From IMG/VR virus record IMGVR_UViG_3300046665_000548, positions 1-64,000 of that record: a stretch of DNA of 64,000 nucleotides, one strand, 5' to 3'. This document shows positions 4,897 through 52,304 of the stretch, piece after piece. The position numbers and the translations under genes are program-made. The notes beneath the pieces were generated by a model. The model had not been told where the DNA came from, made no database searches, and saw only the letters and a program-made list of their open reading frames with translations. Each line of letters starts with the position of its first letter. Position 1 is the first letter of the stretch.

Positions 4897-4902
4897 TAAA
4901 TA
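4897..4902 (+). promoter_or_regulatory. T4-like late promoter core
   Basis: cTAAATA 5 nt before ATG 4908. Confidence 0.65.
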
Positions 4903-4907
4903 GGGCT

Positions 4908-5141
4908 ATGACGATAAGCACAGTAGCCCTCATGGAAGCCCAAATAGAATTGGACGATCTCAATCTTGTTGGAATGTTTGTGGATGACGCGGTTGCGATC
5001 CTCCGAGAGACATACAAAAACTTTGACATCAAGGTCGCAGAGCCTAGCGCCAAAGCCAGAGTTGGTGTCATCGATAACACGACAATCTGGGTTTGGATTT
5101 CCTCCGAATCGTATCGAGTGACGGCGCTCGTCCATCAGTAA
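4908..5141 (+). CDS. Small late protein
   Basis: Follows late promoter; N-terminal ALMEA. Confidence 0.65.
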   Translation: MTISTVALMEAQIELDDLNLVGMFVDDAVAILRETYKNFDIKVAEPSAKARVGVIDNTTIWVWISSESYRVTALVHQ

Positions 5142-5147
5142 AGCATC

Positions 5148-5153
5148 TAAATA
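5148..5153 (+). promoter_or_regulatory. T4-like late promoter core
   Basis: cTAAATA 5 nt before ATG 5159. Confidence 0.7.
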
Positions 5154-5158
5154 GACGT

Positions 5159-6004
5159 ATGATGACATTCGTACGCCTAATGGAGCTTGCTGGCCAGCCC
5201 ATTCTCCTTGAACGCCTCACGCCTTCTCAGGCGAAGGCTATTTTTGTTCAGCATGGTGCGCCGGAAACGGCTTTCTCGTCACCAGAAGCGCTCAAAGCGG
5301 CGTGGAAAAAACTCATTATCCAGCATCACCCAGATCGCGGCGGCAGTCCTGGCGTAGCGCAGGAGGTCAACGCGGCCTTCGACGTGCTCAAATCAACGCC
5401 TGTGTCTTCGTCTGGATCAAGTCAAGATTGGCCTGACTACAGCAAGGGCTCGTACGGCCGATCTAGCCAGGAAGATAGTGATCCATATCCGGTATGGGCT
5501 CAAGCGGGATGGTCTGGTGGTGCGCGCGAATCCGGCCGTATCAGCCGTAACGATTATCGCGACATGAATTTCTTCAAGAAGAAGATGTGGGAATTGAGCG
5601 GCCAATCGAAAGAAGAATGGACAATCACTGCATTCGACGGCAGCTTTTTCCGCAATTCTCTGACTGTTTATGGTTCGCCCAAAATTTTCAAAGACATGGC
5701 CGAAGCAATGGTCATGTGGAATTCTAAGGGTGGAAATTCTTATCCGACCCGCGCCGTGTTCGCGTCTCGTCGTCGTTCAAAGAAGATGTACGTGATCTAC
5801 TGTGATGGAAAGTTCATGAGCTTTGATCCGCCCGCCCTCGCTCACGACTCGATGAATGACAATCCAAGTAACGATCAGAGCTTCATGCGACAAATGCCTG
5901 AGATGCTGGATCGGATCATGGCGCAGCGTCAACAGTCGAGAAATTCACGAGCCGAAGCCGAAGATCGCGAATGGCAAGGTCGTACTCGGAACGGAGACAA
6001 TTAA
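5159..6004 (+). CDS. J-domain-containing late protein
   Basis: LKAAWKKLIIQHHPDRGG...QEVNAAFDVL. Confidence 0.8.
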   Translation: MMTFVRLMELAGQPILLERLTPSQAKAIFVQHGAPETAFSSPEALKAAWKKLIIQHHPDRGGSPGVAQEVNAAFDVLKSTPVSSSGSSQDWPDYSKGSYGRSSQEDSDPYPVWAQAGWSGGARESGRISRNDYRDMNFFKKKMWELSGQSKEEWTITAFDGSFFRNSLTVYGSPKIFKDMAEAMVMWNSKGGNSYPTRAVFASRRRSKKMYVIYCDGKFMSFDPPALAHDSMNDNPSNDQSFMRQMPEMLDRIMAQRQQSRNSRAEAEDREWQGRTRNGDN

Positions 6005-6712
6005 GTGCGCTACCACGAAATTATCGAAATGGCTCCGTCTCCTGAAGTGAAAGCGATGCCGCTTTATCACGGTACCAAAACTGAGGAGGCCGCTCGAAAT
6101 ATCCTAGCCAATGGAATTCAGCCTGGAGCCCTTACTCAGGGTAGAGGACATCTCGCTCCGGTTGCGGGCAAGGTCTATCTTACCCCAAGTATCGAGTATG
6201 CGACTATCTATGCGCTCGGTGGCGTCTGGATGACGCACGCGATGCGACCTGAATTGCTAAAGGGAAGCCAGTTCGGTTACGTGTTTGTTGTCGATGGTAA
6301 TGCCTTAACTGACATTCAGCCGGATGAAGACTCAGTAGGAGAATTCATCGGCAAGCATTCGGAACGCAAAAGAAACCCAATCACTGGTCGCTACATCGGA
6401 TGGGACTTTCGATCAGATGGCGTCGATGATCAAGCGAAACGAATGGTTTATCACAACATCAAACATTCGATGACGCCGCGCCAATATGAAGCGTCTTGCG
6501 AAGGGTTCATCGCGGCCCAAGCTGCTGGCGGCAAACGGGCTCTAAAGCGATTGTCAAATGAAGATAAGGCCAATCTCGTCAAGTGGGGCGCTCATATCGC
6601 CCATGACGGTGCGATCCATCCAGTTGCGTGTTGGAAGATCGACAAGATGCGATCCGCAGAGATAGCGAAGGACGCGTCCAATTTCTTTGATATAGCTGAA
6701 CGCGTCCTCTAA
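6005..6712 (+). CDS. Putative ADP-ribosyltransferase-fold protein
   Basis: LYHGT...NILANGI...VYLT...ATIYA; N-terminal MRYHEIIE. Confidence 0.6.
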   Translation: MRYHEIIEMAPSPEVKAMPLYHGTKTEEAARNILANGIQPGALTQGRGHLAPVAGKVYLTPSIEYATIYALGGVWMTHAMRPELLKGSQFGYVFVVDGNALTDIQPDEDSVGEFIGKHSERKRNPITGRYIGWDFRSDGVDDQAKRMVYHNIKHSMTPRQYEASCEGFIAAQAAGGKRALKRLSNEDKANLVKWGAHIAHDGAIHPVACWKIDKMRSAEIAKDASNFFDIAERVL

Positions 6713-6717
6713 ACCTG

Positions 6718-7227
6718 TTAGCGGCAGCCCTTGTTCGAGTAGGCAGTATGACTGTCGAACTTGGCAATCGGGCGAAGCGTTGCGAAGAAAACCTTCGAAT
6801 TAGCTGAAACCCCAACGTTGTCGGTGCGCTTGTAGTAGTGAGCGCACTTCATCTTAGCAGGAAGCGCAACCTTACCCGTGTAAACCTCTTCGGCAACCTG
6901 CGTCGCTACGGTCCAAGCCTTGGCGTCACGGATTGGCTTGCCGCCACCCGCCCACTGGGTCCAAGAAAACTGCTTAGGCTGCCATACGGTCTTGCAAACA
7001 GTGTTGCCCCATTCGCTTTGAGCCAGAGTGCGGTTGACCGTAATCAGAGCGATCAGCTTCTGCGCATTAACCGATTCGCCGCGACCTTCATGGTACACGT
7101 TTTGCGCGAGACATTCCTTCTCACGAGATTGAGTGAACTTGGCGTGACCGGCCATGGTCGCGAGAGGCAGCACGATTGCTGCGGTCAGGAAGGTAGAAAT
7201 CTTCGAAATGAGCTTTTTTGAAAACAC
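6718..7227 (-). CDS. SleB-like cell wall hydrolase (Hydrolase_2) with signal peptide
   Basis: CLAQNVYHEGRGE, VNR, TVCKTVWQPKQFSWT. Confidence 0.9.
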   Translation of the reverse strand: MFSKKLISKISTFLTAAIVLPLATMAGHAKFTQSREKECLAQNVYHEGRGESVNAQKLIALITVNRTLAQSEWGNTVCKTVWQPKQFSWTQWAGGGKPIRDAKAWTVATQVAEEVYTGKVALPAKMKCAHYYKRTDNVGVSANSKVFFATLRPIAKFDSHTAYSNKGCR

Positions 7228-7376
7228 TCTGTTCCCCTATCGTTGCCGCGCTTCGTGCGCTTGGAGACAACTTAGCAGGGGCAGGTTAAACAAACGTTGC
7301 CAGGATAGGACAAGACTAGCGATGGTTAATGCATGGAAAATGCTTGCTATATGGTCGGTTCGTGGTATGATTAGCC

Positions 7377-7844
7377 ATGCAACTTTTTGTCGATTCTGAT
7401 GGGGTCTTTTACGACTTCACCCAACATGTAATTGATCTGTTCGGTATTCATCCCGATCAGTTCTCTGGCGGTCCGAACGCGATGTGGGAAACCATCAACG
7501 CGAACGACACCTTTTGGCAGACCATGCCTTTGATGCCAGACGCTCTCCTGCTTTGGGAGGCCATCAAACCGGCTCGCCCAATCGTGCTCACTGGGTGTCA
7601 TCGCGACAACTATGACAGCATCGTTACGCACAAGGAAAAGCGGTGGCTGGAGGATTTTAGTCAGTCCAGCATCATCACGTGCTTGTCCAAAAACAAGGCA
7701 ATGCACATGGAGAAGCCTGGAGACATCTTGGTGGACGATACCTATCGTATCATCAAGAAGTGGGAGGCTGCTGGTGGTCGCGGTGTTCTGTTCAAGAACG
7801 CGTCCCAGGCTATCGCTGACTTGAAGACCCTCGGGGTTATCTGA
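7377..7844 (+). CDS. HAD-family 5'(3')-deoxyribonucleotidase
   Basis: FVDSDGVFYDF, LTG, ILVDD; TATGAT 5 nt upstream of ATG. Confidence 0.85.
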   Translation: MQLFVDSDGVFYDFTQHVIDLFGIHPDQFSGGPNAMWETINANDTFWQTMPLMPDALLLWEAIKPARPIVLTGCHRDNYDSIVTHKEKRWLEDFSQSSIITCLSKNKAMHMEKPGDILVDDTYRIIKKWEAAGGRGVLFKNASQAIADLKTLGVI

Positions 7845-7847
7845 TCG

Positions 7848-8066
7848 ATGGCTGACGACATGCAGACGCACGTCGCCAAAACGATCTGCTGGGCTGCCGC
7901 GACTGACCTTCGTGAGAGGGACGGTTGCGGCATCTGCTATGAGAACGGTGGCGAATGCAACATGTGGCCGCATTTCATGCGAGAAGCCGATCTCGCTATC
8001 AAAGCGGTTCGCGAATATGCTATGTTGACCCCGAGGAAGAAGCCGAGATTGAACTCGGAACGCTAA
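7848..8066 (+). CDS. Cys-rich hypothetical protein
   Basis: Directly follows the HAD gene. Confidence 0.55.
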   Translation: MADDMQTHVAKTICWAAATDLRERDGCGICYENGGECNMWPHFMREADLAIKAVREYAMLTPRKKPRLNSER

Positions 8067-8069
8067 ATA
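8064..8069 (+). promoter_or_regulatory. T4-like late promoter core
   Basis: cTAAATA upstream of 8098. Confidence 0.65.
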
Positions 8070-8097
8070 CACGGTATTTTTCGTGTAAAGGTGGCAA

Positions 8098-9657
8098 ATG
8101 ACAAAATCTCCTCGTGAAACTCTCTCCGGCATCCGTGGCTGGATGAGCATCATCAACGAAGCGATTGATCCCGATCAGGCAACGGTGGATCAAGCTGCCG
8201 CAGACGCTGTTCTTGAAGACACACCACAAGCAGCTTTCGGTGACGACGGAGGTTCTACAAGTTCGACAACTACGTCAACTCCACAGCAAGCTTTCGGAGA
8301 ACCAGCAGATACTCCGCAAGCAGCGTTTGGCGAACAGGGCGACACTCCGCAGGCAGCTTTCGGGGAGTCGAAATCATTTCGCGATTACCTCGCGTTGGTT
8401 GAAGGCGATGTAGCAGGTGGTGATCAGCGTAAAGTTGATTCTAAGACCTCGCGAGACGATGACACTCCTGGAAAAGACGAGCCCGTTCTTCCTGGCGTGA
8501 TCGAGAATGCTGAGAATCATCAGAAACACGACCGTGCGCTTGGTGAATATAGCATTCGCGGATGGATGAACGTCATCAGCGAAGCAACTATCTCGGAAGA
8601 TGATGGTGATACTGTTACATCCGGTGATGGCCCAACCGGCGAAACCACCGCAACAGTAGACTCAACTCCATCTAGTAGTACAATCAGTTCTGGCGATGGC
8701 CCAACTGGAGAAACTACTGCAACTGTAGATACAACTCCAACCGCGTCTACCGCGTCCACTGGTGGAGATTATGCTGCCGCTTCCGATGCCGGTAACGGAA
8801 ATAGCTCTGTAGCAGATGCTGGCGCGGCTTCCGACGCAGGTAACGGAAATGGTTCGGTTGATCCGACGCCCGGTGGATCGACTCCTACGGCAGCGTCTCC
8901 CTTCGCATCTGGAACATCGGCTTACGCCAGTCATGGAGTAACCGGCGCTACCCCGGACAATCCTTCTACCATGACTGGTGGGTCTCCGTTCACATCCGGA
9001 ACGTCGGCATATAACAGTTATGGCGCAACGGGCGCAGCGCCAACAGCAGGAGCCGATACAACAGGATCGATTTCTAAGCCTGCCGCTGCGGCTCCCGCCG
9101 CTGGCGCGGGCGGTGAGCGAACTTACACTGTTCAGAAGGGCGACACCTTGTCGGGTATCGCTAAGGCTCAGACCGGTGACGGAAGCCGCTCTAGCTACAT
9201 GAAGATGGCTGCCGATAGCGGGATCAAGAACCCAGACATGATTCAGCCGGGTCAGCAAATTAAGATTGGCGGCGGTTCGGCTGCCGCCCCTGCTGCTCAG
9301 GCGGCTCCTCGCGCGGCGGCTCCAGCAGCAGCGGCCCCAGCGGCCCCAGCGGCGGCTCCTCAGGCGGCAGCCTCGGGAACCGGTGGAGTTGGATCGGATT
9401 CGCGTTATGGTGGCCAGAACAGCGTCGCAAGTGCTCCATCTGGAACTGGCGGTGTCGGTTCGGATTCCCGCTACGGCGGCCAAAATACTCCTGCTCCTGG
9501 CGGGGAAGGCGCTCGTGTTTCCGACGCCGCAAATCGCGGTCGCGCGCCCTCTACGACGGGCAGTACCGGAGCACCGGCAAGCGCCGCACCTGCGCCCGCT
9601 GCTCCGACAGGCGGCGCAAGCGTTCGAGATGCGGCAAATCGCTGGCGTCGCGCATAA
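8098..9657 (+). CDS. LysM-domain, low-complexity repeat virion protein
   Basis: YTVQKGDTLSGIAK...GIKNPDMIQPGQQIKI; several internal repeats. Confidence 0.85.
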   Translation: MTKSPRETLSGIRGWMSIINEAIDPDQATVDQAAADAVLEDTPQAAFGDDGGSTSSTTTSTPQQAFGEPADTPQAAFGEQGDTPQAAFGESKSFRDYLALVEGDVAGGDQRKVDSKTSRDDDTPGKDEPVLPGVIENAENHQKHDRALGEYSIRGWMNVISEATISEDDGDTVTSGDGPTGETTATVDSTPSSSTISSGDGPTGETTATVDTTPTASTASTGGDYAAASDAGNGNSSVADAGAASDAGNGNGSVDPTPGGSTPTAASPFASGTSAYASHGVTGATPDNPSTMTGGSPFTSGTSAYNSYGATGAAPTAGADTTGSISKPAAAAPAAGAGGERTYTVQKGDTLSGIAKAQTGDGSRSSYMKMAADSGIKNPDMIQPGQQIKIGGGSAAAPAAQAAPRAAAPAAAAPAAPAAAPQAAASGTGGVGSDSRYGGQNSVASAPSGTGGVGSDSRYGGQNTPAPGGEGARVSDAANRGRAPSTTGSTGAPASAAPAPAAPTGGASVRDAANRWRRA

Positions 9658-9664
9658 GTTATTT

Positions 9665-9696
9665 GGAGGGTATGCGTAATATTTCGCGTACCCTCC
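9665..9696 (+). terminator. Stem-loop after LysM gene
   Basis: GGAGGGTATGCG...CGCGTACCCTCC; no clear T tract. Confidence 0.5.
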
Positions 9697-9801
9697 TGAA
9701 CCGAATTTCAGTGTTCGGTTTCGAATAATCTCGTTATTCAGTTGACGAAAAGCTAAAACTACCTTAGACCCCTGTCACCGAATTTGTCACAGGAGAGGTA
9801 C

Positions 9802-11463: not shown

Positions 11464-11472
11464 GCGGCTCTA

Positions 11473-11498
11473 AGGGGAGGGTAATTCAGCCCTCCCCT
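11473..11498 (+). promoter_or_regulatory. Intercistronic stem-loop
   Basis: AGGGGAGGG...CCCTCCCCT. Confidence 0.5.
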
Positions 11499-11500
11499 AC

Positions 11501-15136: not shown

Positions 15137-15145
15137 GAATGTCTC

Positions 15146-19882: not shown

Positions 19883-20824
19883 TCACTCGGCGCTACGAAA
19901 TGGTTTTAATACTTGAGGGGAGCCTTCATACGCGTACCAGTTCACACCATCGGTATAGTGAACCTCGCCATTCATCGGCCATCTCTGTCTTGCACGAAGA
20001 GCGGGTATCTTGTCTTCGTACGGGCCGTCAATCACTTCTCGTGTGTGCCGGTCGGTGACATAATAGCCAGTAGACCAGCGCAAAGCTTTCCCCTCGGATA
20101 CTGGAGCACGACGCAATACTAGCGGCTTATCGTCTGTTTTCTTCTTAGGCTTCGAGTAAATGCCCCAATCGCCATCGGCATCAAATCCCGCTCCGAGACC
20201 ACCGGCCACAGTTGCCACGTTCGAAGAGCAGCTTGCACCAGACGACGCGTCTTCTCGCAACTCTAGCTCACGTTCCATCAGAAAGTGGATGTGTCCGAGC
20301 AGTTCACTTTTGGGGGCACGGGATCGAAGCATCATGTGCAAACGAGTCAACGCTAGTTTCTTGTCCGGGCTCTCCAGAGTCGGCCATTCCATGATCATGC
20401 GGCGAAGACTGCGCATAGCCACGTCGGAGATACGGAGATCAAAATCTAAGCGGACAAATAAGCGTCGGGTTTGCTCATCATGGGGGTGACCCATGGCGTA
20501 CTCTTTGAGCCATCCCATGACTAGCTTGTGGTTCAGCGGATACCAGCTTGAACCCTCCTCGTGCTGCTCCGGCTTAATTGCGTGCAGCAATACGTAAAGA
20601 TCAGTAGCGTTGTTTCGCCACTGATCAAAATTGCCCCAGGTCACAGTCTTGCGGGCGTATTCTCGTGCCCATCTGGTTGTTTCTAGTTCTAAGAACGCGA
20701 TGCGCATTGCGCAAAGGTATAGGAACGTCAATTCCCCGATCTGCTTGGCTTTGTAGCGCTCAAGCGATGCTTTTGACGGGAACAGACTGCTTTCTGACAG
20801 TTGGGATAAGAAAGAAAAACTCAC
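19883..20824 (-). CDS. Late/virion protein
   Basis: MSFSFLSQLSES; TAAATA 4 nt upstream (20829-20834). Confidence 0.8.
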   Translation of the reverse strand: MSFSFLSQLSESSLFPSKASLERYKAKQIGELTFLYLCAMRIAFLELETTRWAREYARKTVTWGNFDQWRNNATDLYVLLHAIKPEQHEEGSSWYPLNHKLVMGWLKEYAMGHPHDEQTRRLFVRLDFDLRISDVAMRSLRRMIMEWPTLESPDKKLALTRLHMMLRSRAPKSELLGHIHFLMERELELREDASSGASCSSNVATVAGGLGAGFDADGDWGIYSKPKKKTDDKPLVLRRAPVSEGKALRWSTGYYVTDRHTREVIDGPYEDKIPALRARQRWPMNGEVHYTDGVNWYAYEGSPQVLKPFRSAE

Positions 20825-20827
20825 GCA

Positions 20828-21025
20828 CTATTTAGTGTGTGTTTCATCATGCATTACATTGCCGAGCCAGCGCATTACCTCCTCGGCAAAGAGATTCGCT
20901 TTTGTTTTGTGGCCATTGACAAAGATGTCATACCGCATCGACAAGCAAAGTCTCGTATCGAGGGCGAAGTTTATGACGATCTTCTTCCCTCGATGTTTAA
21001 TGTCGATGATTGGCTTAGCCGCCAC
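20828..21025 (-). CDS. Hypothetical protein
   Basis: Operon position; TAG stop. Confidence 0.55.
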   Translation of the reverse strand: MAAKPIIDIKHRGKKIVINFALDTRLCLSMRYDIFVNGHKTKANLFAEEVMRWLGNVMHDETHTK

Positions 21026-23716: not shown

Positions 23717-23980
23717 TTAGACCTTTTTCTTGGATTCCCTAATCTGCTGGATTTTACGACGAAATTTGCCGTCATCCTGGCTCTTGATGCTGTTGAAGAG
23801 CCGACGAGTAAGCTCGTCGGCCGTCTCAGAATCATAATTCTCTTTGATAAGGTTCATTAGGTGCGTGACGCTGCTAATGACCTGGATAGCTCTGCCTTCG
23901 ATGAACAGATCACTGTTCGTCGCTGTCTTTGGTACGTAATCCGCTAATTCATCCAGAATACTGGAAAACTTCTTATCCAA
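23717..23980 (-). CDS. Phage late protein
   Basis: SILDEL...IEGRA...LIKENY...RRLFNSIKSQDDGKFRRKI. Confidence 0.8.
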   Translation of the reverse strand: MDKKFSSILDELADYVPKTATNSDLFIEGRAIQVISSVTHLMNLIKENYDSETADELTRRLFNSIKSQDDGKFRRKIQQIRESKKKV

Positions 23981-24260
23981 GATTTTGTCTGCCTTCTTTG
24001 TGCCTGCGGATCAGATTTTCGACCATTTCGGCCGCATTTGCGAAACCGTCTTCATAACCAAGGGCGTAATCCCCGCCCGAGGTTTCCATTACAGAGCGCA
24101 TCTTAAAAACAAGTTCTTCCAGATCACTAATAATAATGGGGGTAATAGCAGGTTCAGATGTGACCTCCTCTACCACGGGCTCATTGTCCGCGCTTTTGCG
24201 CAGGTTTTCAGCGAGCACGATGTACTCCTTCATATAGTCAAGATGATCTAAAGCATGCAT
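23973..24260 (-). CDS. Late protein
   Basis: TAAATA (24268-24273) 7 nt upstream of ATG. Confidence 0.7.
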   Translation of the reverse strand: MHALDHLDYMKEYIVLAENLRKSADNEPVVEEVTSEPAITPIIISDLEELVFKMRSVMETSGGDYALGYEDGFANAAEMVENLIRRHKEGRQNLG

Positions 24261-24287
24261 GATAGGCTATTTAGCCTTTCACTCATC

Positions 24288-26890: not shown

Positions 26891-27271
26891 TTATTCGTCG
26901 TCCGGGCGACGCACGAGAGTAACCTGTCGCTTTCTCACACGACGAGCGATGGTCTCTTGTAAGCTCACCGCTGGTCCAGCAATCAAGTTGAAGTCCTTTC
27001 TTGAGAAATGCTTCAAGAATGGCCTGAAGGGACGAAAGTCCTGGCCGAGGAAAATGTTGATCGGGATTTGACGATTCGACTCCCACCACCAACGCTCGCC
27101 AAGCTCTAGAAACTCTTTTCGCAGTTCTTCAACTGGGATGAGGTCCAAGACGTACATGGAAAGCAATTGGTTATCAGAGTTCTGAATGATCCCCAAATAA
27201 TGAACTTCTTGCAGGCATCCGTACGATAAGAACGGAAAGCTCTCAAGGATTTTTGCGACGCGTGTATCCAT
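26891..27271 (-). CDS. Phage protein of unknown function
   Basis: FPFLS...WWWESNRQIPINIFL; late promoter 10 nt upstream. Confidence 0.8.
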   Translation of the reverse strand: MDTRVAKILESFPFLSYGCLQEVHYLGIIQNSDNQLLSMYVLDLIPVEELRKEFLELGERWWWESNRQIPINIFLGQDFRPFRPFLKHFSRKDFNLIAGPAVSLQETIARRVRKRQVTLVRRPDDE

Positions 27272-27281
27272 AATATGGGGG

Positions 27282-27324
27282 TATTTAGTATAGAAAAAAC
27301 AACGTTGATCGAACGCGATAAATA
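27282..27324. promoter_or_regulatory. Back-to-back late promoters
   Basis: TATTTA 27282-27287 (minus) and TAAATA 27319-27324 (plus). Confidence 0.7.
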
Positions 27325-27329
27325 TCTTC

Positions 27330-41022: not shown

Positions 41023-41122
41023 AGTAATCCTCTCTTGGTGCAGCGTGGCACCTGAACTAATATTGTTACCCCTGTAGTTTTATCTGAATAAATTCCCACG
41101 GGCAATAATTTAGCAGTGAGAA

Positions 41123-43702: not shown

Positions 43703-43788
43703 TTACTCGCAACAACTTTACTGAAATATACTTGAAGCCTAACGGCCTCGTAGCAGATCGGCAATAATCGCCTGCTATACTTATCGGT

Positions 43789-46025: not shown

Positions 46026-46102
46026 CGTAAAGTCCTTTTTTGCAATAAACAGACCTTGGACTGCTCGGTTCGAGATGTCAAAATGTGTCGTTTCGAAATC
46101 CC

Positions 46103-46130
46103 TTGACGAAATCCAATTTCCATGTAGATT
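46103..46130 (+). promoter_or_regulatory. Sigma70-type promoter, probably leaderless transcript
   Basis: TTGACG-N16-TAGATT, ATG 6 nt later. Confidence 0.6.
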
Positions 46131-46136
46131 GGTGTG

Positions 46137-46454
46137 ATGCAACAACCGTGGACCCCCGGTGTTACCGTCGAATCAGTGGATGACCTGTATTCTCGCAGGG
46201 ATGCTATGGATATCGACGGGTATTACGAGCAAGGGGAAGTTAATCCTTGGGAGGGCCGGTGTGCAGTGGTCCCGAGGACGGCTCGGTTCTACTGCATGGT
46301 GCCGTCCGATGATGGGCAGCGTCTCACTATGGCGCGGGTACTTTTGCGAGGCGTTGCCATGCGCCGAAAAGTTCGCGAGGTCGTGCGTGAAAAGCACGAA
46401 ATCAATTATAACCAGTTCGCTGCTCCTGGGCAGATTGTGGTTCTTTACGTCTAA
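46137..46454 (+). CDS. Hypothetical protein
   Basis: First gene of plus-strand operon. Confidence 0.65.
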   Translation: MQQPWTPGVTVESVDDLYSRRDAMDIDGYYEQGEVNPWEGRCAVVPRTARFYCMVPSDDGQRLTMARVLLRGVAMRRKVREVVREKHEINYNQFAAPGQIVVLYV

Positions 46455-46463
46455 GGGGTCTTC

Positions 46464-47846
46464 GTGATCAAAATTCACAATTTCCGAGCCGGTTTCGCCA
46501 CTAACTCGTCTTCTTCGCATAGCGTGGTGCTGATCCCCGACGACTTGATAGGACAAGTGGCCTCTATCGACGGAGACCATGGCGATTATGGTTGGAATTA
46601 TTTCCGCCTCACGTCACAGGAAGAGAAGCTTCGGTATCTCGCGGCGCAGTGCGTTGCTGGCGGATGGGGTCAGTATAGCGATGATATTCGTTCAGCGATC
46701 CTGGCCGAGGTGCCGGAGGTCGAGTTCGACAGTGGCGATTATGTTGACCATCAGTCGGTGATGACAATTGGCAGCTTCAACCCCACATTGCTGAAGGGGC
46801 TGATTCGCCTTTTCAGGTCCCCAAAGGTCGTCGTACTCGGAGGCAATGATAACTCAGACTCTACCATCAATCACATTGATGGTCAGGTGGAGGAACCGCT
46901 GACGACAGCGTTGGCGAACACCTACGAATGTAAAGTCAGATTTGATAACGGCACTGCTGTTATCATGAACAAATATACGGGCGATAAGGCGAGAATTTCG
47001 CTGGACGACCGGGACTATACTAAAGCCACCTATCCGGAATTGGTCGATTTGAAGATCACCGATTGGTGCGATGTGGGTTGCCAGTTCTGCTACCAGTCTT
47101 CAACGAAGAACGGTAAGCACGCCGACATGGCCGTTATCAGTTCCGTGCTGGAAATGCTCGCAAAGATGGAGGTCTTCGAGATCGCCATCGGCGGCGGCGA
47201 GCCTACCTCGCATCCTCATTTTCTTGAAATTTTGGCCAAATGCTCTCGCGTCGGAATCAAGCCGAATTTCACTACCCTTTCTCGTAAATGGCTTAGTGAT
47301 CCGCTCATGGTTGAAGCGGTGCAGACCGATGTCGGCGGTATTGGCGTTTCTTGCTTGAGCGCTAAGGGTCTCGCGTTGGTCGATGAAATCAAAAAAGCAG
47401 TTACCACCGCATACGGCGGCGGACCGAAAGTCATGGCACAACATGTGCTGGGCAGCGTCCCGCTGTGGGTGACGGCCGAATTCCTAAATGCGGCCTTTGA
47501 AGCGAAACACGCCGTTTTGCTTCTCGGCTACAAAGATGTCGGGTTCGGCAAGGATTACGAGCGCCACGACGGCGGCGATGTGCCATTGTTTCTCAAGACC
47601 GGCGTCCAGAAGTTCGACGGAAAAGCCAGCCTCAGCGTCGATACGGCGCTTGTGGATCGGTATCCTGAATTGGTGAGCGCACTCGGTGCAGTCGAGGCCC
47701 AGGTGTCTAGCCCAGAGGGCAAGTTCTCCTGCTATGTTGACGCCGTAGAAGGTCTGATCGGACCATCCTCGTATGTCCAGGCATCCGAGATGGAAAAGCT
47801 GCCGACTTCCTTGGCGGACTTTGTGAAGGTTTTTGCGAGCTTCTGA
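46464..47846 (+). CDS. Radical SAM protein fused to N-terminal TNSSS-motif domain
   Basis: RAGFATNSSSSHS; CDVGCQFC; GGGEPTSHP. Confidence 0.9.
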   Translation: MIKIHNFRAGFATNSSSSHSVVLIPDDLIGQVASIDGDHGDYGWNYFRLTSQEEKLRYLAAQCVAGGWGQYSDDIRSAILAEVPEVEFDSGDYVDHQSVMTIGSFNPTLLKGLIRLFRSPKVVVLGGNDNSDSTINHIDGQVEEPLTTALANTYECKVRFDNGTAVIMNKYTGDKARISLDDRDYTKATYPELVDLKITDWCDVGCQFCYQSSTKNGKHADMAVISSVLEMLAKMEVFEIAIGGGEPTSHPHFLEILAKCSRVGIKPNFTTLSRKWLSDPLMVEAVQTDVGGIGVSCLSAKGLALVDEIKKAVTTAYGGGPKVMAQHVLGSVPLWVTAEFLNAAFEAKHAVLLLGYKDVGFGKDYERHDGGDVPLFLKTGVQKFDGKASLSVDTALVDRYPELVSALGAVEAQVSSPEGKFSCYVDAVEGLIGPSSYVQASEMEKLPTSLADFVKVFASF

Positions 47847-47882
47847 GGGGGTCAGTTGCAATTTCGCGGTAATGGAGGCCAG

Positions 47883-48611
47883 ATGCGTTTTAGCGGCTCA
47901 GTTCGCTTCTACGACCGTCTTACGCCGTCTCTATCCAATTCATGTTATCTGGCGCGCGTCCAGCAGATGGTCGCGGCCGAATGGTTTGCTGAAAAGGATT
48001 TTTGCGACCACGGTGAAGAAGGTCCTTTCGCAAAGGAAATTGCATACGAACACGCCACCGAGTGGTATCATACAACTCTTCGCAACGATTGGGTTCAGCA
48101 CGGGTACGTGTTTGTCTCCAAACCTATTTGGGATGCCGGGGCATACGTTGTCGATGTCGGGTTAACTGACATGGGAGAGGACGCTCTCAAATCCATTCGG
48201 CAAGGCTACGTGTGGGACCATCCTGATCTTGTCGAGGGCACAAAGGGGGTCAATATTCCGGATACTTTAACACACTGGCGAAGGCTTATTGCGTTATTCC
48301 ATCCGGACACACCGACCCCTTCTGATCTGATTGACATGGTTCGCTCCGTATCACAGTTACCAAATATAGAATTGCACGTTCTATCCGATGATCTCGATAG
48401 TGCGATCCAGGCCCATGCGGCTGGAATGTTCTGGGATGAAAAGTCTCGTGAGCCGGACATCGAAAAATCGCTGAATTATTGGCGGATGCGAATCAAATCA
48501 ATCGAGACGCACGGCGATCCCTTGTTCAAACGGATCACTGCTGTATCCGAACATCCGGCAATGAAGCCCATCTTGTCGGAACTTATGATGTGGAAAATCT
48601 GTTTAGAGTGA
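47883..48611 (+). CDS. Hypothetical protein
   Basis: GGAGG SD before ATG 47883. Confidence 0.75.
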   Translation: MRFSGSVRFYDRLTPSLSNSCYLARVQQMVAAEWFAEKDFCDHGEEGPFAKEIAYEHATEWYHTTLRNDWVQHGYVFVSKPIWDAGAYVVDVGLTDMGEDALKSIRQGYVWDHPDLVEGTKGVNIPDTLTHWRRLIALFHPDTPTPSDLIDMVRSVSQLPNIELHVLSDDLDSAIQAHAAGMFWDEKSREPDIEKSLNYWRMRIKSIETHGDPLFKRITAVSEHPAMKPILSELMMWKICLE

Positions 48612-48734
48612 ATGGCTTCCGGTAAGGTTTGGGTTTGCTCTCTGCAAGTTATTGATGTAGAACAAATGACAAATCTCCACACAGAGTCCTGAGAAAAACA
48701 AACAGGCCGAGGGCCAAAGGGCTGGTCGCTATCA

Positions 48735-49151
48735 ATGAGTGAAGAATCCGTACATGGCCTTGTACCAACAGCACTTGTACCAACAGCACTTGAAGATATT
48801 CTAGCGTCGTTCAATAACAGCGAGACGGTCAAGTTCGGCGCTACAGGCGAGAGTTTGATTCAACGTTTATTCCGTAGGGCGTTCATTTTGATAATGGAGC
48901 ACAATGGAGTAACGGAATTCTTCAATAAACCGGTAGAGTACGAAGACACGATATTTGCCTACTACTCGGCAGAGGTAGTGAACGATTCGAAAATTATCTA
49001 TCTTAATGGGGCCGATTACATTCGGATTAACGACGAGGATGAGTGTGCAGTGATTGCCCGGCTCAAAGTTGGCGAAGGCGTTGCTTCGACTTACTACGTG
49101 GCCGCGACTAGCGAGTCGTTCGTTACTATGGCGATCATGAAGTTCACTTAA
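48735..49151 (+). CDS. Hypothetical protein (distant FKLRW-family ending)
   Basis: 138-aa ORF ending SESFVTMAIMKFT. Confidence 0.65.
   Translation: MSEESVHGLVPTALVPTALEDILASFNNSETVKFGATGESLIQRLFRRAFILIMEHNGVTEFFNKPVEYEDTIFAYYSAEVVNDSKIIYLNGADYIRINDEDECAVIARLKVGEGVASTYYVAATSESFVTMAIMKFT
48759..48791 (+). repeat. 15-nt tandem duplication
   Basis: CTTGTACCAACAGCA x2 plus CTT (LVPTA-LVPTA-L). Confidence 0.85.
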
Positions 49152-49159
49152 GGAGAACT

Positions 49160-49378
49160 ATGCAGTACATTACACAGGGCAACACGAACTTCACGATTAG
49201 AGGCGAACCGCTTAAGAAGCACACGGTGATCCGTGAGGATAAGCTTGCTCGTCTCGATAAGGTGACCGAGATTTCGAGTTTGCATCTGACCGGCCTGAAC
49301 CTTGGAGAGATCGTTACTCTGTTTCAACGGAGAGGCCCGCATTTAATGATTCGCCCGCGCAACGTCACGCTTCACTAG
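49160..49378 (+). CDS. Hypothetical protein
   Basis: AAGGAG SD. Confidence 0.65.
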   Translation: MQYITQGNTNFTIRGEPLKKHTVIREDKLARLDKVTEISSLHLTGLNLGEIVTLFQRRGPHLMIRPRNVTLH

Positions 49379-49388
49379 GGAGAGTTCT

Positions 49389-49871
49389 ATGGGACCGGAG
49401 GATATTCGCTGGCTCAAGATGCAACGGTGGATCAGTCATTGCATTGAGGAGATCGGGTGGGCTGCGGTCTACGTCTTTCCAACGCCGGACAAGCCAGACC
49501 TTATTCCATTCACGTACACCATCGGGCTTACGTCGAAGAATCTTCCTGAACTCATCCTGTTTGGATTGGGCGACAGGCAGGCCCACGGCATCATCTCTTC
49601 GGCAATTGCAAACCTCGATCTCACAACGGTTGAGGAGTATGTGTCGTATAATGAGGTCAGCAAAAACCTCCCTGTTGAGTTTCGCGACCTCCCGCAAAGC
49701 TCGGTTGAAGAATATCTCTGTCAGGCAAGCGCCTATTACAGCGATAAAAAGCTGGTTCGAGCCCGACAACTAATTTGGCCGGATGCTAAAGGCCGGTTTC
49801 CTTGGCATAGGGACTGTGAACCGAAATATGCTCGCCTCCAAAGCGAAGTAATCGACTGGAGATTAAACTGA
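49389..49871 (+). CDS. DUF4262-family protein
   Basis: GWAAVYV, FTYTIGL, PELILFGL, QLIWPDAKGRFPW. Confidence 0.85.
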   Translation: MGPEDIRWLKMQRWISHCIEEIGWAAVYVFPTPDKPDLIPFTYTIGLTSKNLPELILFGLGDRQAHGIISSAIANLDLTTVEEYVSYNEVSKNLPVEFRDLPQSSVEEYLCQASAYYSDKKLVRARQLIWPDAKGRFPWHRDCEPKYARLQSEVIDWRLN

Positions 49872-50296
49872 TGCCTCTTTTTCCACTCGTCATCGGTGAA
49901 GGTGAGCGCGAAACAATTAAAGCTCTTGTCGAAACGGCTGAAGAGCAGATGATCAAGCATGACCAAATGCTTGAATTGGTCGCAAAGTCTGAGCGTGGCG
50001 AACCTGTTGGCGGTTCGATGAATGATCATCTGACAATTCAAATTCCGGTGAATTACCAAGCCACCTTCACCGTGGAAGAACATGCTCCAGAGCGGCCATT
50101 TCGTCACCTTTCAGTTTCCATCGTCAATGGGAGAAAGGGACGCGGCCCTGCGCCAGAGGCCATGGCTATGGTGATGAAAGAATTCGGTTTCCGTGGGTCT
50201 ACAACGGACCCCAATTCGAGGCTTGTAGTGTACCCGGAGACGCTAGCTGACGGAACGTTCGCCGTGAATGTCCTGGAGCCGATGCAAGACAACTGA
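49871..50296 (+). CDS. Hypothetical protein
   Basis: RHLSVS motif; coupled start. Confidence 0.7.
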   Translation: MPLFPLVIGEGERETIKALVETAEEQMIKHDQMLELVAKSERGEPVGGSMNDHLTIQIPVNYQATFTVEEHAPERPFRHLSVSIVNGRKGRGPAPEAMAMVMKEFGFRGSTTDPNSRLVVYPETLADGTFAVNVLEPMQDN

Positions 50297-50297
50297 C

Positions 50298-50570
50298 ATG
50301 GCTTTTGTGATCAAGGACCGTGTTTCAAAGCAGTATTTCGCGCGCGGCGGAGGGTTCAATTCAAACATCAATCTGGCGAAGCAGTATGCGAATGTGTCTC
50401 AAGCCAATACCACTCTGAAGGCTGAGCTTCGCAACTGGCCTTCCTCCGCTGGGACGTTCAAAACATGTATCATCGTAGAAGTTCTGCTGCTTGACTTATC
50501 AGAGGTCAGCGATGTTCAGCGACCTTTGCTCGATGATCTTCTTCTAGTTCGTAAGCTTGAAGGGGCCTAA
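50298..50570 (+). CDS. Hypothetical protein
   Basis: Operon position. Confidence 0.6.
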   Translation: MAFVIKDRVSKQYFARGGGFNSNINLAKQYANVSQANTTLKAELRNWPSSAGTFKTCIIVEVLLLDLSEVSDVQRPLLDDLLLVRKLEGA

Positions 50571-50779
50571 GGCTCTGTAATTCGAGGGCCGATCTCTACA
50601 AGCTGTTGTTCGAACCATGGGTCTTGGCTACCCATGAGGCTCCACGTTTTTACTCGATTGTCCCAACCACCCGGCTGCCACCGATCTTGGCCGGGAAATT
50701 TTATCCAATAGTAGCCGGTTTCTCTATCAACGTCGGAATGCTTCAGATGGTACTGAAGAAGATAGTCTATTCTCGACAT
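50567..50779 (-). CDS. Hypothetical protein
   Basis: GGAGG SD; GYYW...EIGPRI. Confidence 0.65.
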   Translation of the reverse strand: MSRIDYLLQYHLKHSDVDRETGYYWIKFPGQDRWQPGGWDNRVKTWSLMGSQDPWFEQQLVEIGPRITEP

Positions 50780-50791
50780 AGGTCCCTCCGG

Positions 50792-51700
50792 TTATCTTTT
50801 CGCCAAATAGTCTAGAATCGCCATTCGAACAGCAACTCCGTACTCAACTTGCTTTCGAATAACAGAATTTTCACCGTCCGCAACATCAGACGCGATTTCC
50901 GTCCCTCGGTTCATCGGACCTGGATGCATGACCATAACGTCCGGAATGGCCAAGGCCATTTTTTCGGCTGTTAGTCCGTAATTGTCATGGTAATCCTCCA
51001 TAGAAAATTCCGGCATGTCAGTAAAGCGCTCTTTTTGAATGCGCAGCATCATGATCGCATTAGCGTCTTCGATACCCTCCTCCATATTGGAGAGGATCGG
51101 AATGCCGGGAAAGTCTTCGGCCGCAGGCTGCATGGCCGGAGGTGCGACAAGACGAACTCTTGCTCCCAGTTTGGAAAGCAACAGTGCGTTCGACCGAGCT
51201 ACGCGAGAATGTTTGATATCTCCGCAGATTGCGACGTTGATGTTATCGAGCGTCTTGAAACGATCCACCAATACAAGGGCGTCCGCCATCGCTTGCGTCG
51301 GATGCTCGTTAGTGCCGTCGCCCCCGTTGATCACGGGGCAACCTGCATATTGATGATGATCGTGAGGGGCAAAGTTCTGCGGATGGCGAATGACAAAGAT
51401 ATCCGGCTTCATAGCGCTGAGTGTAAGCAAGGTGTCTTTCAGAGACTCGCCCTTCTGAGCCGACGATCCCGCCTCGGTTACGTTCACAACGTCGAGCCCG
51501 AGTCTCTTTCCAGCGATCTCGAATGATACGCGAGTTCGAGTGGAATTCTCGTAGAACAAGTTTATCAGCGTAAGGCCGTTCAGGAAATTGTACTTCTTGT
51601 CGCTCTTCGAACGGTTAGACCGAACGTATTGCCAAGCATCATCTAGAATTGTGTTGATGGTATCAAGATCGAGACTGTCGATGCCGAGAAAATGACGCAT
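50792..51700 (-). CDS. pyrB: Aspartate carbamoyltransferase catalytic subunit
   Basis: FYENSTRT, KGES, HPTQ, GDIKHSRVARS, RIQKER, HPGP. Confidence 0.96.
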   Translation of the reverse strand: MRHFLGIDSLDLDTINTILDDAWQYVRSNRSKSDKKYNFLNGLTLINLFYENSTRTRVSFEIAGKRLGLDVVNVTEAGSSAQKGESLKDTLLTLSAMKPDIFVIRHPQNFAPHDHHQYAGCPVINGGDGTNEHPTQAMADALVLVDRFKTLDNINVAICGDIKHSRVARSNALLLSKLGARVRLVAPPAMQPAAEDFPGIPILSNMEEGIEDANAIMMLRIQKERFTDMPEFSMEDYHDNYGLTAEKMALAIPDVMVMHPGPMNRGTEIASDVADGENSVIRKQVEYGVAVRMAILDYLAKR

Positions 51701-51815
51701 AAAGAAATGATCCTGAACGATGATTAAACCTTCGAATTGGTATCGGACACTGAAGATGGTTGCAACCATTTTGTCCAAGATATAGGGTATTTCATCACAT
51801 CAATGAGGACTAGCG

Positions 51816-52061
51816 ATGTCAATTGACTTCACAAAACTCCAGCCTGTCTCAGTCGAGGTTGATCCGAATGAAGAGGTATCAGCGATCATCAAGATGCAGC
51901 CCGGTCGCAAACCATCGAAATACCGAATGCGTATCGTGGATGACATTTACACGATTGACACCACGAGAGGAGAGTTCGACCGTCTTCAGAAGAGTGACGA
52001 TGTGATATCGATTACTCTGAACGAGAAGCTATCTATGATAGGTGATGTTCCAGATAAATAA
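51816..52061 (+). CDS. Hypothetical protein
   Basis: GAGGA SD. Confidence 0.65.
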   Translation: MSIDFTKLQPVSVEVDPNEEVSAIIKMQPGRKPSKYRMRIVDDIYTIDTTRGEFDRLQKSDDVISITLNEKLSMIGDVPDK

Positions 52062-52064
52062 TGG

Positions 52065-52304
52065 ATGACTGACACACCGACAGAAGAAACACCACTTGGC
52101 CCGCGTACGCGTGTTACTGCTGCCGCCATCGGTGGATCGTTCGCGATGGGAATGGCGATCTACCTTGTATTAAAGGGATCGCCAACCAACTCTCTTCACG
52201 AGAGTGCCCTGTCATGGTCTTACTTGATGATGGTTGGTATCCTCATTGGTCTCGGTTTTGGGGCGATCAAAGACCTCATGCCGTCTTGGTTCGTCAAAAA
52301 GTAA
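52065..52304 (+). CDS. Two-TM late membrane protein (holin candidate)
   Basis: TAAATA 52055-52060; two TM helices; basic C-terminus. Confidence 0.55.
   Translation: MTDTPTEETPLGPRTRVTAAAIGGSFAMGMAIYLVLKGSPTNSLHESALSWSYLMMVGILIGLGFGAIKDLMPSWFVKK

What the first reader, a model, noticed from the sequence alone, without database searches (positions are those of the whole stretch)
4897..52065. Many late genes appear leaderless
TAAATA lies only 4-10 nt before the start codon with no SD at 4908 (5 nt), 5159 (5), 20824 (4), 24260 (7), 27271 (10), 27330 (5) and 52065 (4). Established: T4 late transcripts start about 6 nt after TATAAATA. Inference: these mRNAs begin at or near the AUG and could escape inhibition of SD-dependent initiation. 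Sigma70-type cases at 7377 and 46137 look similar.
Basis: partly seen in the sequence, partly recalled or inferred. Interest (0 to 1): 0.6.

Follow-up and report, generated by a model that had tools for sequence, protein, structure and literature searches.

The report
Leaderless late genes in a huge phage
In this 608-kb phage, and in several uncultured relatives, almost half of the T4-style late promoters sit so close to a start codon that the messenger RNA should begin at the AUG itself; this is statistically solid and not seen in T4, but no RNA data exist to prove it.

Summary
The window is the first 64 kb of a 607,744-bp phage genome with T4-like replication genes and a gp55-like late sigma factor.

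All seven reported TAAATA-to-start spacings are exact, and I found an eighth site at 35272(-). Genome-wide, 94 of 210 TAAATA sites have an ATG 4-7 nt downstream, with peaks at 4 nt (27 sites) and 5 nt (44 sites). The background is about 4.6 per offset (p about 6e-43).

TAAATA behaves as a promoter:
- It lies 12-53 nt upstream of 52 SD-led genes, including tail sheath and baseplate hub.
- It lies 7-19 nt before five tRNA 5' ends.
- It is rare inside coding sequence.

With T4 geometry (motif at -11 to -6), a 5-nt spacer puts +1 on the A of ATG.

The start codons hold up:
- 55 of 79 have no upstream in-frame start.
- SD is at or below random frequency.
- Family profiles and orthologues align from residues 1-4.
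- Four divergent gene pairs have only 28-58 nt between their ATGs.

A sigma70-like promoter class shows the same fusion (ATG 6 nt after the -10 element).

The trait recurs in five related phage contigs (three of 415-561 kb, two fragments of 40-75 kb). It is absent from T4 and PA5oct.

The idea that these mRNAs escape a block on SD-dependent initiation is not supported. No TSS data exist.

The parts
4897..4910 (+). Late-type promoter core TAAATA (4897-4902), 5-nt spacer, ATG 4908. ORF 4908-5141 (77 aa).
   Evidence: Best coding frame of six (score 6.2). No family hit.
5148..6004 (+). TAAATA (5148-5153), 5-nt spacer, ATG 5159. ORF 5159-6004 (281 aa) with a weak DnaJ-like match. N-terminus MMTFVRLMELAG.
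   Evidence: The homologue in relative G001 has CATAAATA-acgc-ATG with N-terminus MSFSLLRLLELSG.
19883..20834 (-). TAAATA (20834-20829), 4-nt spacer, GTG 20824. ORF 19883-20824 (313 aa).
   Evidence: This is the first start in the ORF. The GTG start is atypical for a leaderless mRNA. No relatives found.
23973..24273 (-). TAAATA (24273-24268), 7-nt spacer, ATG 24260. ORF 23973-24260 (95 aa). It lies in the 27-nt gap after the gp41-like helicase gene.
   Evidence: An alternative SD-led in-frame start lies 14 codons downstream. No relatives found.
26891..27287 (-). TAAATA (27287-27282), 10-nt spacer, ATG 27271. ORF 26891-27271 (126 aa, phrog_11637). Predicted short leader of about 5 nt, not leaderless.
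   Evidence: The PHROG profile aligns residue 9 to profile position 5 of 119. There are 24 orthologues; 22 have TAAATA 5-35 nt upstream, five of them at 5-6 nt.
27319..28100 (+). TAAATA (27319-27324), 5-nt spacer, ATG 27330. ORF 27330-28100 (256 aa) with a weak match to a virion structural protein. It is divergent from the 27271 gene, with only 58 nt between the two ATGs.
   Evidence: The orthologue in G002 (42% identity) aligns from residue 1 and has TAAATA-tcgg-ATG.
52055..52304 (+). TAAATA (52055-52060), 4-nt spacer, ATG 52065. ORF 52065-52304 (79 aa).
   Evidence: best frame of six, score 4.6. No family hit.
34991..35283 (-). TAAATA (35283-35278), 5-nt spacer, ATG 35272. ORF 34991-35272 (93 aa).
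   Evidence: score 15.3.
8064..9657 (+). Leadered late-type promoter for comparison. TAAATA 8064-8069, 28-nt leader with aaaggtgg, ATG 8098 (LysM protein, 519 aa).
59678..61899 (-). Virion structural protein gene. TAAATA 61899-61894, 26-nt leader, GTG 61867 (729 aa). There is also an intragenic, in-frame TAAATA (61613-61608), 4-nt spacer, ATG 61603.
   Evidence: phrog_13484 profile position 17 aligns to residue 99 of the 813-aa reading. That corresponds to residue 15 of the 729-aa reading.
46103..46454 (+). Sigma70-like promoter: TTGACG (46103-46108), 16-nt spacer, TAGATT (46125-46130), 6 nt, ATG 46137 (105 aa).
   Evidence: (PWM 28.5 bits).
55238..55619 (-). Sigma70-like promoter: TTGACG (55619-55614), 16-nt spacer, TAGTTT (55597-55592), 6 nt, ATG 55585 (115 aa).
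   Evidence: (PWM 34.5 bits).
7344..7844 (+). Weaker sigma70-like case: TTGCTA (7344-7349), 16-nt spacer, TATGAT (7366-7371), 5 nt, ATG 7377 (155 aa; 5'-3' deoxyribonucleotidase family).
   Evidence: The PHROG profile aligns from residue 2. The promoter scored below my 14-bit threshold.

Best explanation
VTAAATA (V = not T) is the -10-like late promoter of this phage. It is read by host RNA polymerase carrying the phage's gp55-family sigma factor.

In about 45% of these promoters, a start codon has been placed 4-7 nt after the motif. That is roughly 80-95 sites genome-wide and seven or eight in the window. With T4 geometry the motif occupies -11 to -6, so a 5-nt spacer puts +1 on the A of AUG. 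The transcript then starts with AUG or carries 1-2 extra nucleotides. It has no Shine-Dalgarno sequence, so initiation would follow the leaderless route, in which a ribosome with initiator tRNA binds a 5'-terminal AUG.

Downstream cistrons of the same operons use ordinary SD sites, as does the other half of the late promoters (leaders of 12-53 nt). About a fifth of the phage's sigma70-like promoters (GCTTGACR-N13-TGGTAGATT) are built the same way, with ATG 6 nt after the -10 hexamer.

Shown here: the motif, the spacing, its statistics, its conservation and the start-codon assignments. Inferred: which sigma factor reads the motif, the exact transcription start, and the initiation route.
For: 1. 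Spacing. ATG follows TAAATA at offset 4 in 27 sites and at offset 5 in 44, against about 4.6 elsewhere. This does not depend on gene calls. The reversed-pattern control gives 6 against 71.

2. TAAATA is a promoter, not an RNA signal.
- It lies 12-53 nt upstream of 52 genes with SD sites in between. Only 7 of those also have an ATG at +4-7.
- It lies 7-19 nt before the mature 5' end of five tRNAs. For the three closest of these (7-8 nt), that puts the start within about 8 nt of the motif.
- Only 38 of 210 sites fall in called coding sequence, which covers 75% of the genome.
- No positions upstream of -12 are conserved.
- A gp55-family sigma factor is encoded (phrog_12791, E = 5e-65; 45% identity to the PA5oct late sigma).
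- No phage RNAP beta-prime was found.
- Downstream genes include tail sheath, baseplate hub, tail fibre and virion proteins.

3. Geometry. The T4 gp55 open-complex structure flips bases at -12, -9 and -8. This places TATAAATA at -13 to -6, so +1 is the sixth nt after the motif (PMC7892883). In the 5-nt class the base before ATG is C or T in 31 of 35 cases, the usual pyrimidine(-1)/purine(+1) pattern.

4. The start codons are real.
- 55 of 79 have no upstream in-frame start.
- A strict SD occurs in 6 of 79, against 219 of 542 other genes and 11% at random positions.
- Only 12 of 79 have any SD-led in-frame start within 40 codons downstream.
- ATG is the start in 77 of 88.
- PHROG profiles align from residues 3-4 for a tail-sheath-like protein and a virion protein.
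- About 25-30 otherwise unrelated proteins share an N-terminal peptide that begins at this Met.

5. Architecture.
- Four divergent pairs have 28-58 nt between their ATGs, filled by two back-to-back motifs.
- In the 111-117 kb operon, genes of one N-terminal family are TAAATA-fused when first and SD-led when internal.
- Some sites sit directly after terminator-like hairpins.

6. Conservation.
- 6 of 8 gene pairs shared with relative G001 (26-59% amino-acid identity) keep TAAATA-N4-6-ATG, while the spacer sequence differs.
- The orthologue of the 27330 gene in G002 keeps it.
- One orthologue instead has the same promoter with a 29-nt leader, GAGGA and GTG.
- The pattern is enriched in G003 (52 vs 7), G004 (72 vs 7) and G006 (48 vs 0).

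7. The first 36 nt of these ORFs are predicted to be less structured than those of other genes (p = 0.002).

8. A -10-like box at a fixed short distance from the start codon is the accepted computational signature of leaderless genes (PMC3160421).
Against: - No transcription start site has been mapped. No RNA run holds this phage.
- gp33 and gp45 homologues were not detected, so the T4 mechanism is only partly documented.
- The 4-nt class prefers G at -1. That does not fit a fixed +1 and may mean a GAUG 5' end.
- A few sites use GTG or TTG, which work poorly on leaderless mRNAs in model bacteria.
- 24 of 79 ORFs could be extended upstream, and 12 have a possible downstream SD-led start.
- The gene calls come from my own crude Markov gene finder.
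- The host is unknown, and so is its capacity for leaderless translation.
Confidence: 0.75

Rival explanations
1. The promoters are real, but the adjacent ATG is not the translation start. The proteins begin at downstream SD-led codons, or the ATG is simply a preferred initiating sequence of the polymerase.
For: - Several TAAATA-N5-7-ATG sites before tRNA clusters or SD-led genes open only 3-25 codons.
- 12 of 79 ORFs have an SD-led in-frame start within 40 codons, including window sites 24260 and 27330.
Against: - Only 7 of 52 leadered TAAATA promoters carry an ATG at +4-7, so ATG is not an obligatory promoter element.
- 55 of 79 ORFs have no other upstream start, and most have no SD-led alternative.
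- Profile and orthologue alignments start at residues 1-4.
- A conserved N-terminal peptide starts at this Met.
Confidence: 0.08
2. TAAATA acts at the RNA level. It would be an A/U-rich, SD-independent ribosome-binding or processing signal on longer polycistronic transcripts, so the mRNAs are not leaderless.
For: - The fixed short distance to the start codon would also suit a translation signal.
- Many of these genes lie in co-directional arrays.
Against: - The same motif precedes tRNAs.
- It also lies at variable distance upstream of SD sites.
- Inner cistrons of the same protein family use SD, not TAAATA.
- Divergent pairs with 28-32 nt between their ATGs cannot be fed from upstream on either strand without antisense transcription through the neighbouring gene.
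- The motif matches the T4/cyanophage late promoter, and a gp55-family sigma factor is encoded.
Confidence: 0.05
3. One reading: leaderless late mRNAs exist so that phage translation continues while SD-dependent initiation is shut down late in infection.
For: - The phage encodes two bS21 ribosomal-protein genes. These could alter initiation.
- The arrangement is conserved across a clade.
Against: - The gp23-like major capsid gene is SD-led, with AAGGAG.
- So are tail sheath, baseplate hub and 50 other TAAATA-driven genes.
- So are the inner cistrons of leaderless-first operons.
- Sigma70-type promoters, presumably early, also make leaderless-type fusions.
- No RegB or IF3 homologue was detected.
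Confidence: 0.08
4. Chance or compositional artefact, or inflation by duplicated paralogues.
For: Some of the genes share an N-terminal peptide.
Against: - p about 6e-43.
- Reversed-pattern control: 6 against 71.
- BLASTP finds only seven small families among 88 proteins.
- The pattern replicates in five other phage contigs.
Confidence: 0.01

Closest known systems
T4 late promoters (TATAAATA; gp55 with gp33 and the gp45 clamp) and the cyanophage variant NATAAATA
   Same: - An A/T-rich -10-like element with no -35 element.
- A gp55-family sigma factor is encoded.
- The element lies upstream of virion genes.
- The same core, TAAATA (PMC2988020).
   Different: - Only TAAATA plus 'not T' at -12 is conserved.
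- gp33 and gp45 were not detected.
- In T4 the TAAATA-N4-5-ATG fusion is not enriched (10 against 12 for the control). Here it accounts for about 45% of sites.
Leaderless genes of Actinobacteria, Deinococcus and others (TANNNT box about 12 bp upstream of the start codon)
   Same: - A -10 box at a fixed short distance from the start codon.
- No SD.
- Strong preference for AUG (PMC3160421; PMC4007540 abstract).
   Different: - Here a phage-specific late promoter and sigma factor are involved as well as a sigma70-type one.
- The genome also uses SD widely.
- The host is unknown.
Single leaderless phage mRNAs such as lambda cI from PRM (from my own knowledge)
   Same: Transcription starts at the A of the AUG of a phage gene.
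   Different: Those are isolated regulatory genes. Here about 90-110 genes are affected across two promoter classes, and the trait is shared by a clade.
PA5oct-type jumbo phages (Arenbergviridae), Asteriusvirus phage A4 and Sinorhizobium phage Phosso
   Same: They have the closest late sigma factors (40-45% identity).
   Different: The pattern is not enriched in them: PA5oct 20 against 30 for the control, Phosso 4 against 2, A4 4 against 22. The PA5oct paper reports only sigma70-like promoters.
phiKZ and AR9 jumbo phages (phage-encoded multisubunit RNAPs)
   Same: Large phages with mapped promoters.
   Different: - No leaderless transcripts were found in phiKZ (PMC8244752).
- AR9 5' UTRs are 26-491 nt (PMC5312081).
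- This phage has no RNAP beta-prime match.

Membership tests
T4-type (gp55-dependent) late promoter | A/T-rich -10-like element related to TATAAATA, with no conserved -35 | tested here: met
   VTAAATA is invariant by construction. No position from -25 to -13 is conserved in 79 + 51 sites. The hexamer is 33-fold enriched upstream of starts.
T4-type (gp55-dependent) late promoter | gp55-family sigma factor encoded by the phage | tested here: met
   G000:C1:390863-391693(-). phrog_12791 E = 5e-65; phrog_234 E = 3e-19. 45% identity to the annotated late sigma factor of PA5oct.
T4-type (gp55-dependent) late promoter | gp33 co-activator and gp45 sliding clamp | tested here: inconclusive
   phrog_254, phrog_223 and PF02916 gave no hit, but the controls did not ring either.
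T4-type (gp55-dependent) late promoter | Drives virion and other late genes | tested here: met
   Tail sheath, baseplate hub, tail fibre, virion proteins and a sheath-stabiliser-like protein lie downstream. It also drives NrdA and tRNAs.
T4-type (gp55-dependent) late promoter | Transcription starts about 6 nt after the motif | not testable with these tools
   No RNA run exists. Indirect evidence: three of the five tRNA 5' ends begin 7-8 nt after the motif.
Leaderless mRNA | -10 element at a fixed distance that puts +1 on the start codon | tested here: met
   Modal spacer is 5 nt for the late class (motif ends at -6) and 6 nt for the sigma70 class (hexamer ends at -7).
Leaderless mRNA | No SD; AUG strongly preferred | tested here: met
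   Strict SD in 6 of 79, against 40% of other genes. ATG in 77 of 88.
Leaderless mRNA | The protein N-terminus lies at that codon | tested here: met
   Profile and orthologue alignments start at residues 1-4. There is no proteomic proof.
Leaderless mRNA | Primary 5' end mapped at the start codon | not testable with these tools
   No RNA data.
T4 capsid-targeting-sequence internal head proteins (side observation) | N-terminal peptide of about 10 residues like MKTYQEFIAE, ending in (L/I)xE, on otherwise unrelated proteins | tested here: met
   Examples: MRYHEIINE, MRYSEIVIDE, MNMRDIITLIE. T4 IpII/IpIII have MKTYQEFIAEA. BLASTP finds the proteins unrelated. The concept is described in PMC3012670.
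T4 capsid-targeting-sequence internal head proteins (side observation) | gp21-type prohead protease present | tested here: met
   PF03420, E = 1e-27, at 369678-370142(-).
T4 capsid-targeting-sequence internal head proteins (side observation) | Packaging into heads and cleavage | not testable with these tools
   Needs virion proteomics.

The most novel reading that the evidence does not exclude
A clade of 400-600-kb soil and freshwater phages has moved about half of its late transcription units, and a fifth of its sigma70-type units, to leaderless initiation. This would be part of a phage-controlled translation regime. Phage-encoded bS21 copies, or other factors not yet recognised, would tune host ribosomes so that 5'-AUG phage mRNAs are favoured over host SD-led mRNAs.
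Probability: 0.1. Interest if true: 0.8.

Novelty: new variant of a known kind. Interest (0 to 1): 0.62.

Why it matters
- Scale. If transcription really starts at these AUGs, this is large-scale, clade-conserved use of leaderless mRNAs by a virus with a T4-type late transcription system. I found no report of this in the paper library, and it is absent from T4 and PA5oct.
- Annotation. It gives a simple rule for start codons in huge-phage genomes, where gene callers that rely on ribosome-binding sites may misplace starts.
- Promoter definition. It defines two promoter classes for an uncultured clade.
- Testability. It offers about 100 natural test cases for what makes a leaderless mRNA translatable. 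In particular, operons in which paralogous genes are leaderless when first and SD-led when internal could be used directly in reporter assays.

Tried and rejected
- RNA evidence. The one run search found only four DNA metagenomes (three labelled soil or rhizosphere), each holding 5-7% of the words, and no RNA. I did not use read laying, because DNA contigs cannot show a transcription start.
- Identity. Megablast against the phage collection gave no match.
- Genetic code. Two CTA-anticodon tRNAs suggested TAG recoding. However, ORF coverage under table 11 is already 80-97% per 20-kb bin, and TAG read-through gains no more than TAA read-through. I used table 11 throughout.
- Late-transcription partners. 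gp33 (phrog_254) and gp45 (phrog_223, PF02916) gave no hits, with silent controls, so the result is inconclusive. Sigma70_r2 and RNAP beta-prime were absent.
- SD-inhibition idea. No RegB (PF10715) or IF3_C was found.
- Host. A genome-contig scan with the NrdA-like protein returned short MAG contigs of mixed phyla, which are probably binned phage DNA. It was uninformative.
- Relatives. None were found for the 20824 and 24260 proteins.
- ATG as a promoter element. Rejected, because leadered promoters mostly lack it.
- Paralogue inflation. Rejected by BLASTP clustering.
- Terminators. A terminator directly upstream was found in only 5 of 79 sites with my simple detector, so this adds little.

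Full report
**What the window is**

The window is bases 1-64,000 of a single 607,744-bp contig. IMG/VR lists it as a virus record, and CheckV estimates it as 100% complete. GC content is 51.7% and it carries 57 tRNA genes.

It encodes T4-like gp32, UvsX and UvsW, a gp41-like helicase and a ClpB-like ATPase. It also encodes a gp23-like major capsid protein and a gp21-like prohead protease. Table 11 reads it well. The only sequencing runs that hold small parts of it are DNA metagenomes, three of the four labelled soil or rhizosphere. No RNA run holds it.

**Check of the observation**

None has an SD in the spacer. Each proposed frame has the best coding score of the six frames.

The window holds 16 TAAATA sites, 14 of them outside called genes. 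Seven of the 16 sites with an ATG at offsets 4-7 gives p = 2e-4.

**Genome-wide picture**

I wrote a simple Markov gene finder, which called 589 genes. TAAATA is the most enriched hexamer in the 22 nt before predicted starts, at 33-fold. The distance from TAAATA to the predicted start has a sharp peak at 4-5 nt and a second broad group at 17-35 nt.

The result does not depend on gene calls:
- Of 210 TAAATA sites, an ATG follows at offset 4 in 27, offset 5 in 44, offset 6 in 12 and offset 7 in 11.
- Other offsets average about 4.6 (p = 6e-43).
- The reversed pattern occurs 6 times against 71.
- Among all hexamer/offset pairs, TAAATA at 5 nt and at 4 nt rank first and second.

**Is TAAATA a promoter?**

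Several lines say yes:
- It lies 12-53 nt upstream of 52 predicted genes, mostly with GGAG-type SD sites in between. Only 7 of these also have an ATG at +4-7, so ATG is not part of the promoter itself.
- It lies 7, 7, 8, 10 and 19 nt before the mature 5' ends of five tRNAs. For the closest of these, transcription must start within about 7-8 nt of the motif.
- Only 38 of 210 sites fall inside called coding sequence, although that covers 75% of the genome.
- Nothing upstream of -12 is conserved, and -12 is almost never T.
- The phage encodes a gp55-family sigma factor. Its nearest named relatives are the late sigma factors of PA5oct-type jumbo phages, at 45% identity.
- It has no Sigma70_r2 match and no RNAP beta-prime match.
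- Genes downstream of TAAATA include tail sheath, baseplate hub/lysozyme, tail fibre, a sheath-stabiliser-like protein and virion structural proteins.

T4 late promoters are an 8-bp TATA box at the -10 position (PMC2988020). Cyanophages use NATAAATA (PMC2984593).

**Geometry**

In the T4 gp55 open complex, the flipped bases are at -12, -9 and -8 (PMC7892883). That places TATAAATA at -13 to -6, so +1 is the sixth nucleotide after the motif. A 5-nt spacer, the modal class, therefore puts +1 on the A of ATG.

In the 5-nt class, the base before ATG is C or T in 31 of 35 cases. In the 4-nt class it is G in 19 of 29, which I cannot explain. Those transcripts may begin GAUG.

**Are the start codons right?**

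I examined the 79 ORFs of at least 50 codons with a 4-7-nt spacer:
- 55 have no upstream in-frame start.
- A strict SD occurs in 6 of 79, against 219 of 542 other genes and 11% of random positions.
- Only 12 have any SD-led in-frame start within 40 codons.
- ATG is the start codon in 77 of 88.

Profile alignments agree:
- PHROG profiles align from residue 4 to profile position 2 for a tail-sheath-like protein, and from residue 3 to position 2 for a virion protein.
- phrog_11637 supports the 27271 start.

About 25-30 of these proteins are unrelated by BLASTP. They nevertheless share an N-terminal peptide that begins at this Met.

The first 36 nt of these ORFs are predicted to be less structured than those of other genes (p = 0.002).

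**Architecture**

Four divergent gene pairs have only 28-58 nt between their ATGs, filled by two back-to-back motifs. One pair is in the window (27271/27330). There is no room for a leader.

In the operon at 111-117 kb, genes of one N-terminal family are fused to TAAATA when they come first (111185, 115462). When internal, they carry SD sites. This is what a promoter-plus-leaderless first cistron predicts. It is not what an RNA-level translation signal predicts.

**Conservation**

Relative G001 is a 75-kb fragment.
- 12 of its 29 TAAATA sites have an ATG at +4-6.
- 6 of 8 gene pairs shared with G000 (26-59% amino-acid identity) keep the fusion although the spacer bases differ. These include the homologue of the window's 5159 gene.
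- One orthologue has the same promoter with a 29-nt leader, GAGGA and GTG. Leader length is therefore evolutionarily labile.

The G002 orthologue of the 27330 gene (42% identity) aligns from residue 1 and has TAAATA-tcgg-ATG.

The 27271 gene has 24 orthologues in huge-phage contigs. Of these, 22 have TAAATA 5-35 nt upstream, five of them at 5-6 nt.

| Genome | TAAATA-N4-5-ATG | Reversed control |
|---|---|---|
| G000 (this phage) | 71 | 6 |
| G002 | 3 | 0 |
| G003 | 52 | 7 |
| G004 | 72 | 7 |
| G006 | 48 | 0 |
| G005 | 31 | 29 |
| G007 | 6 | 6 |
| T4 | 10 | 12 |
| PA5oct | 20 | 30 |
| Phosso | 4 | 2 |
| A4 | 4 | 22 |

The trait belongs to part of an uncultured clade. It is not a general feature of gp55-encoding phages.

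**Second promoter class**

A PWM built from TTGAC-N16-TANNNT sites gives the consensus GCTTGACR-N13-TGGTAGATT. It scores 68 hits in the genome and none in the reversed-sequence control. Eleven hits have an ATG exactly 6 nt after the -10 hexamer, which is +1 for a sigma70-type promoter. The background is about 2.1 (p = 7e-6).

Window examples are 46137 and 55585-. Site 7377 has a weaker promoter, but a family profile confirms its N-terminus.

**The escape-from-SD-inhibition idea**

I found nothing for it and several things against it:
- The major capsid gene is SD-led, with AAGGAG.
- So are tail sheath, baseplate hub and the inner operon genes.
- Sigma70-type promoters, presumably early, show the same fusion.
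- No RegB or IF3 homologue was found.
- The two phage bS21 genes are a lead only.

**What is known**

The computational signature used here is a -10 box at a fixed short distance from the start codon. It is the accepted one for leaderless genes (PMC3160421). phiKZ shows no leaderless transcripts and AR9 has long UTRs. The PA5oct paper lists only sigma70-like promoters. Four literature searches found no paper linking leaderless mRNAs to gp55-type late promoters. The library is incomplete, so this is absence of evidence only.

**Verdict**

Leaderless late transcription units are the best explanation (confidence about 0.75). The trait is a new variant of two known things, the T4-type late promoter and leaderless mRNA. 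The missing piece is a mapped transcription start.

Noticed in passing
G000 111185-117700 (locus L085); also 82337, 164076-, 178608-, 188012-, 315589, 346486 and others; window 5159: At least 35 otherwise unrelated proteins begin with MRYxEIIxE or M(N/D)MRDLIxLxE. This resembles the T4 capsid-targeting sequence of internal proteins IpII and IpIII (MKTYQEFIAEA) and ends in the (L/I)xE motif. A gp21-type prohead protease is present. They may be a very large set of packaged and injected proteins.
   Followed up: partly
window 4091-4178, 4180-4256 and 1944-2020: Two adjacent tRNAs have anticodon CTA (amber-suppressor type). A third tRNA has an odd anticodon loop, which ARAGORN reads as 'ggaa'. The genome nevertheless reads well in table 11, and TAG read-through gains no more ORF coverage than TAA read-through.
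   Followed up: partly
G000 440677-440832(+) and 510818-510976(-): Two phage-encoded ribosomal protein bS21 genes, both above the Pfam cut-off.
   Followed up: no
G000 149093, 162641, 343185, 523712, 238128-, 219177-: TAAATA-N5-7-ATG opens ORFs of only 11-24 codons just upstream of tRNA clusters. These could be leaderless mini-ORFs or non-coding 5' ends of tRNA precursors.
   Followed up: no
window 61601-61613(-): An intragenic TAAATA with an in-frame ATG 4 nt downstream lies inside the virion structural protein gene (59678-61867). It may be an internal promoter that makes a product 88 residues shorter at the N-terminus.
   Followed up: no
genome-wide; window 3875-3901, 46103-46130, 55592-55619(-): There is a very uniform sigma70-like promoter, GCTTGACR-N13-TGGTAGATT, with an almost invariant 16-nt spacer (68 hits, none in the control). 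From memory, the CTTGAC -35 element resembles alpha-proteobacterial promoters, which hints at the host. I did not test this.
   Followed up: partly
genome-wide late promoters: The base before the ATG is C or T when the spacer is 5 nt, but G when it is 4 nt. The position before TAAATA is almost never T, although T4 has A at -12 and T at -13.
   Followed up: partly
G001 (L038-L041) sigma70-like promoters: In relative G001, a conserved ATCA lies 6-9 nt after the -10 hexamer in most sigma70-like promoters. It is probably the start-site region.
   Followed up: no
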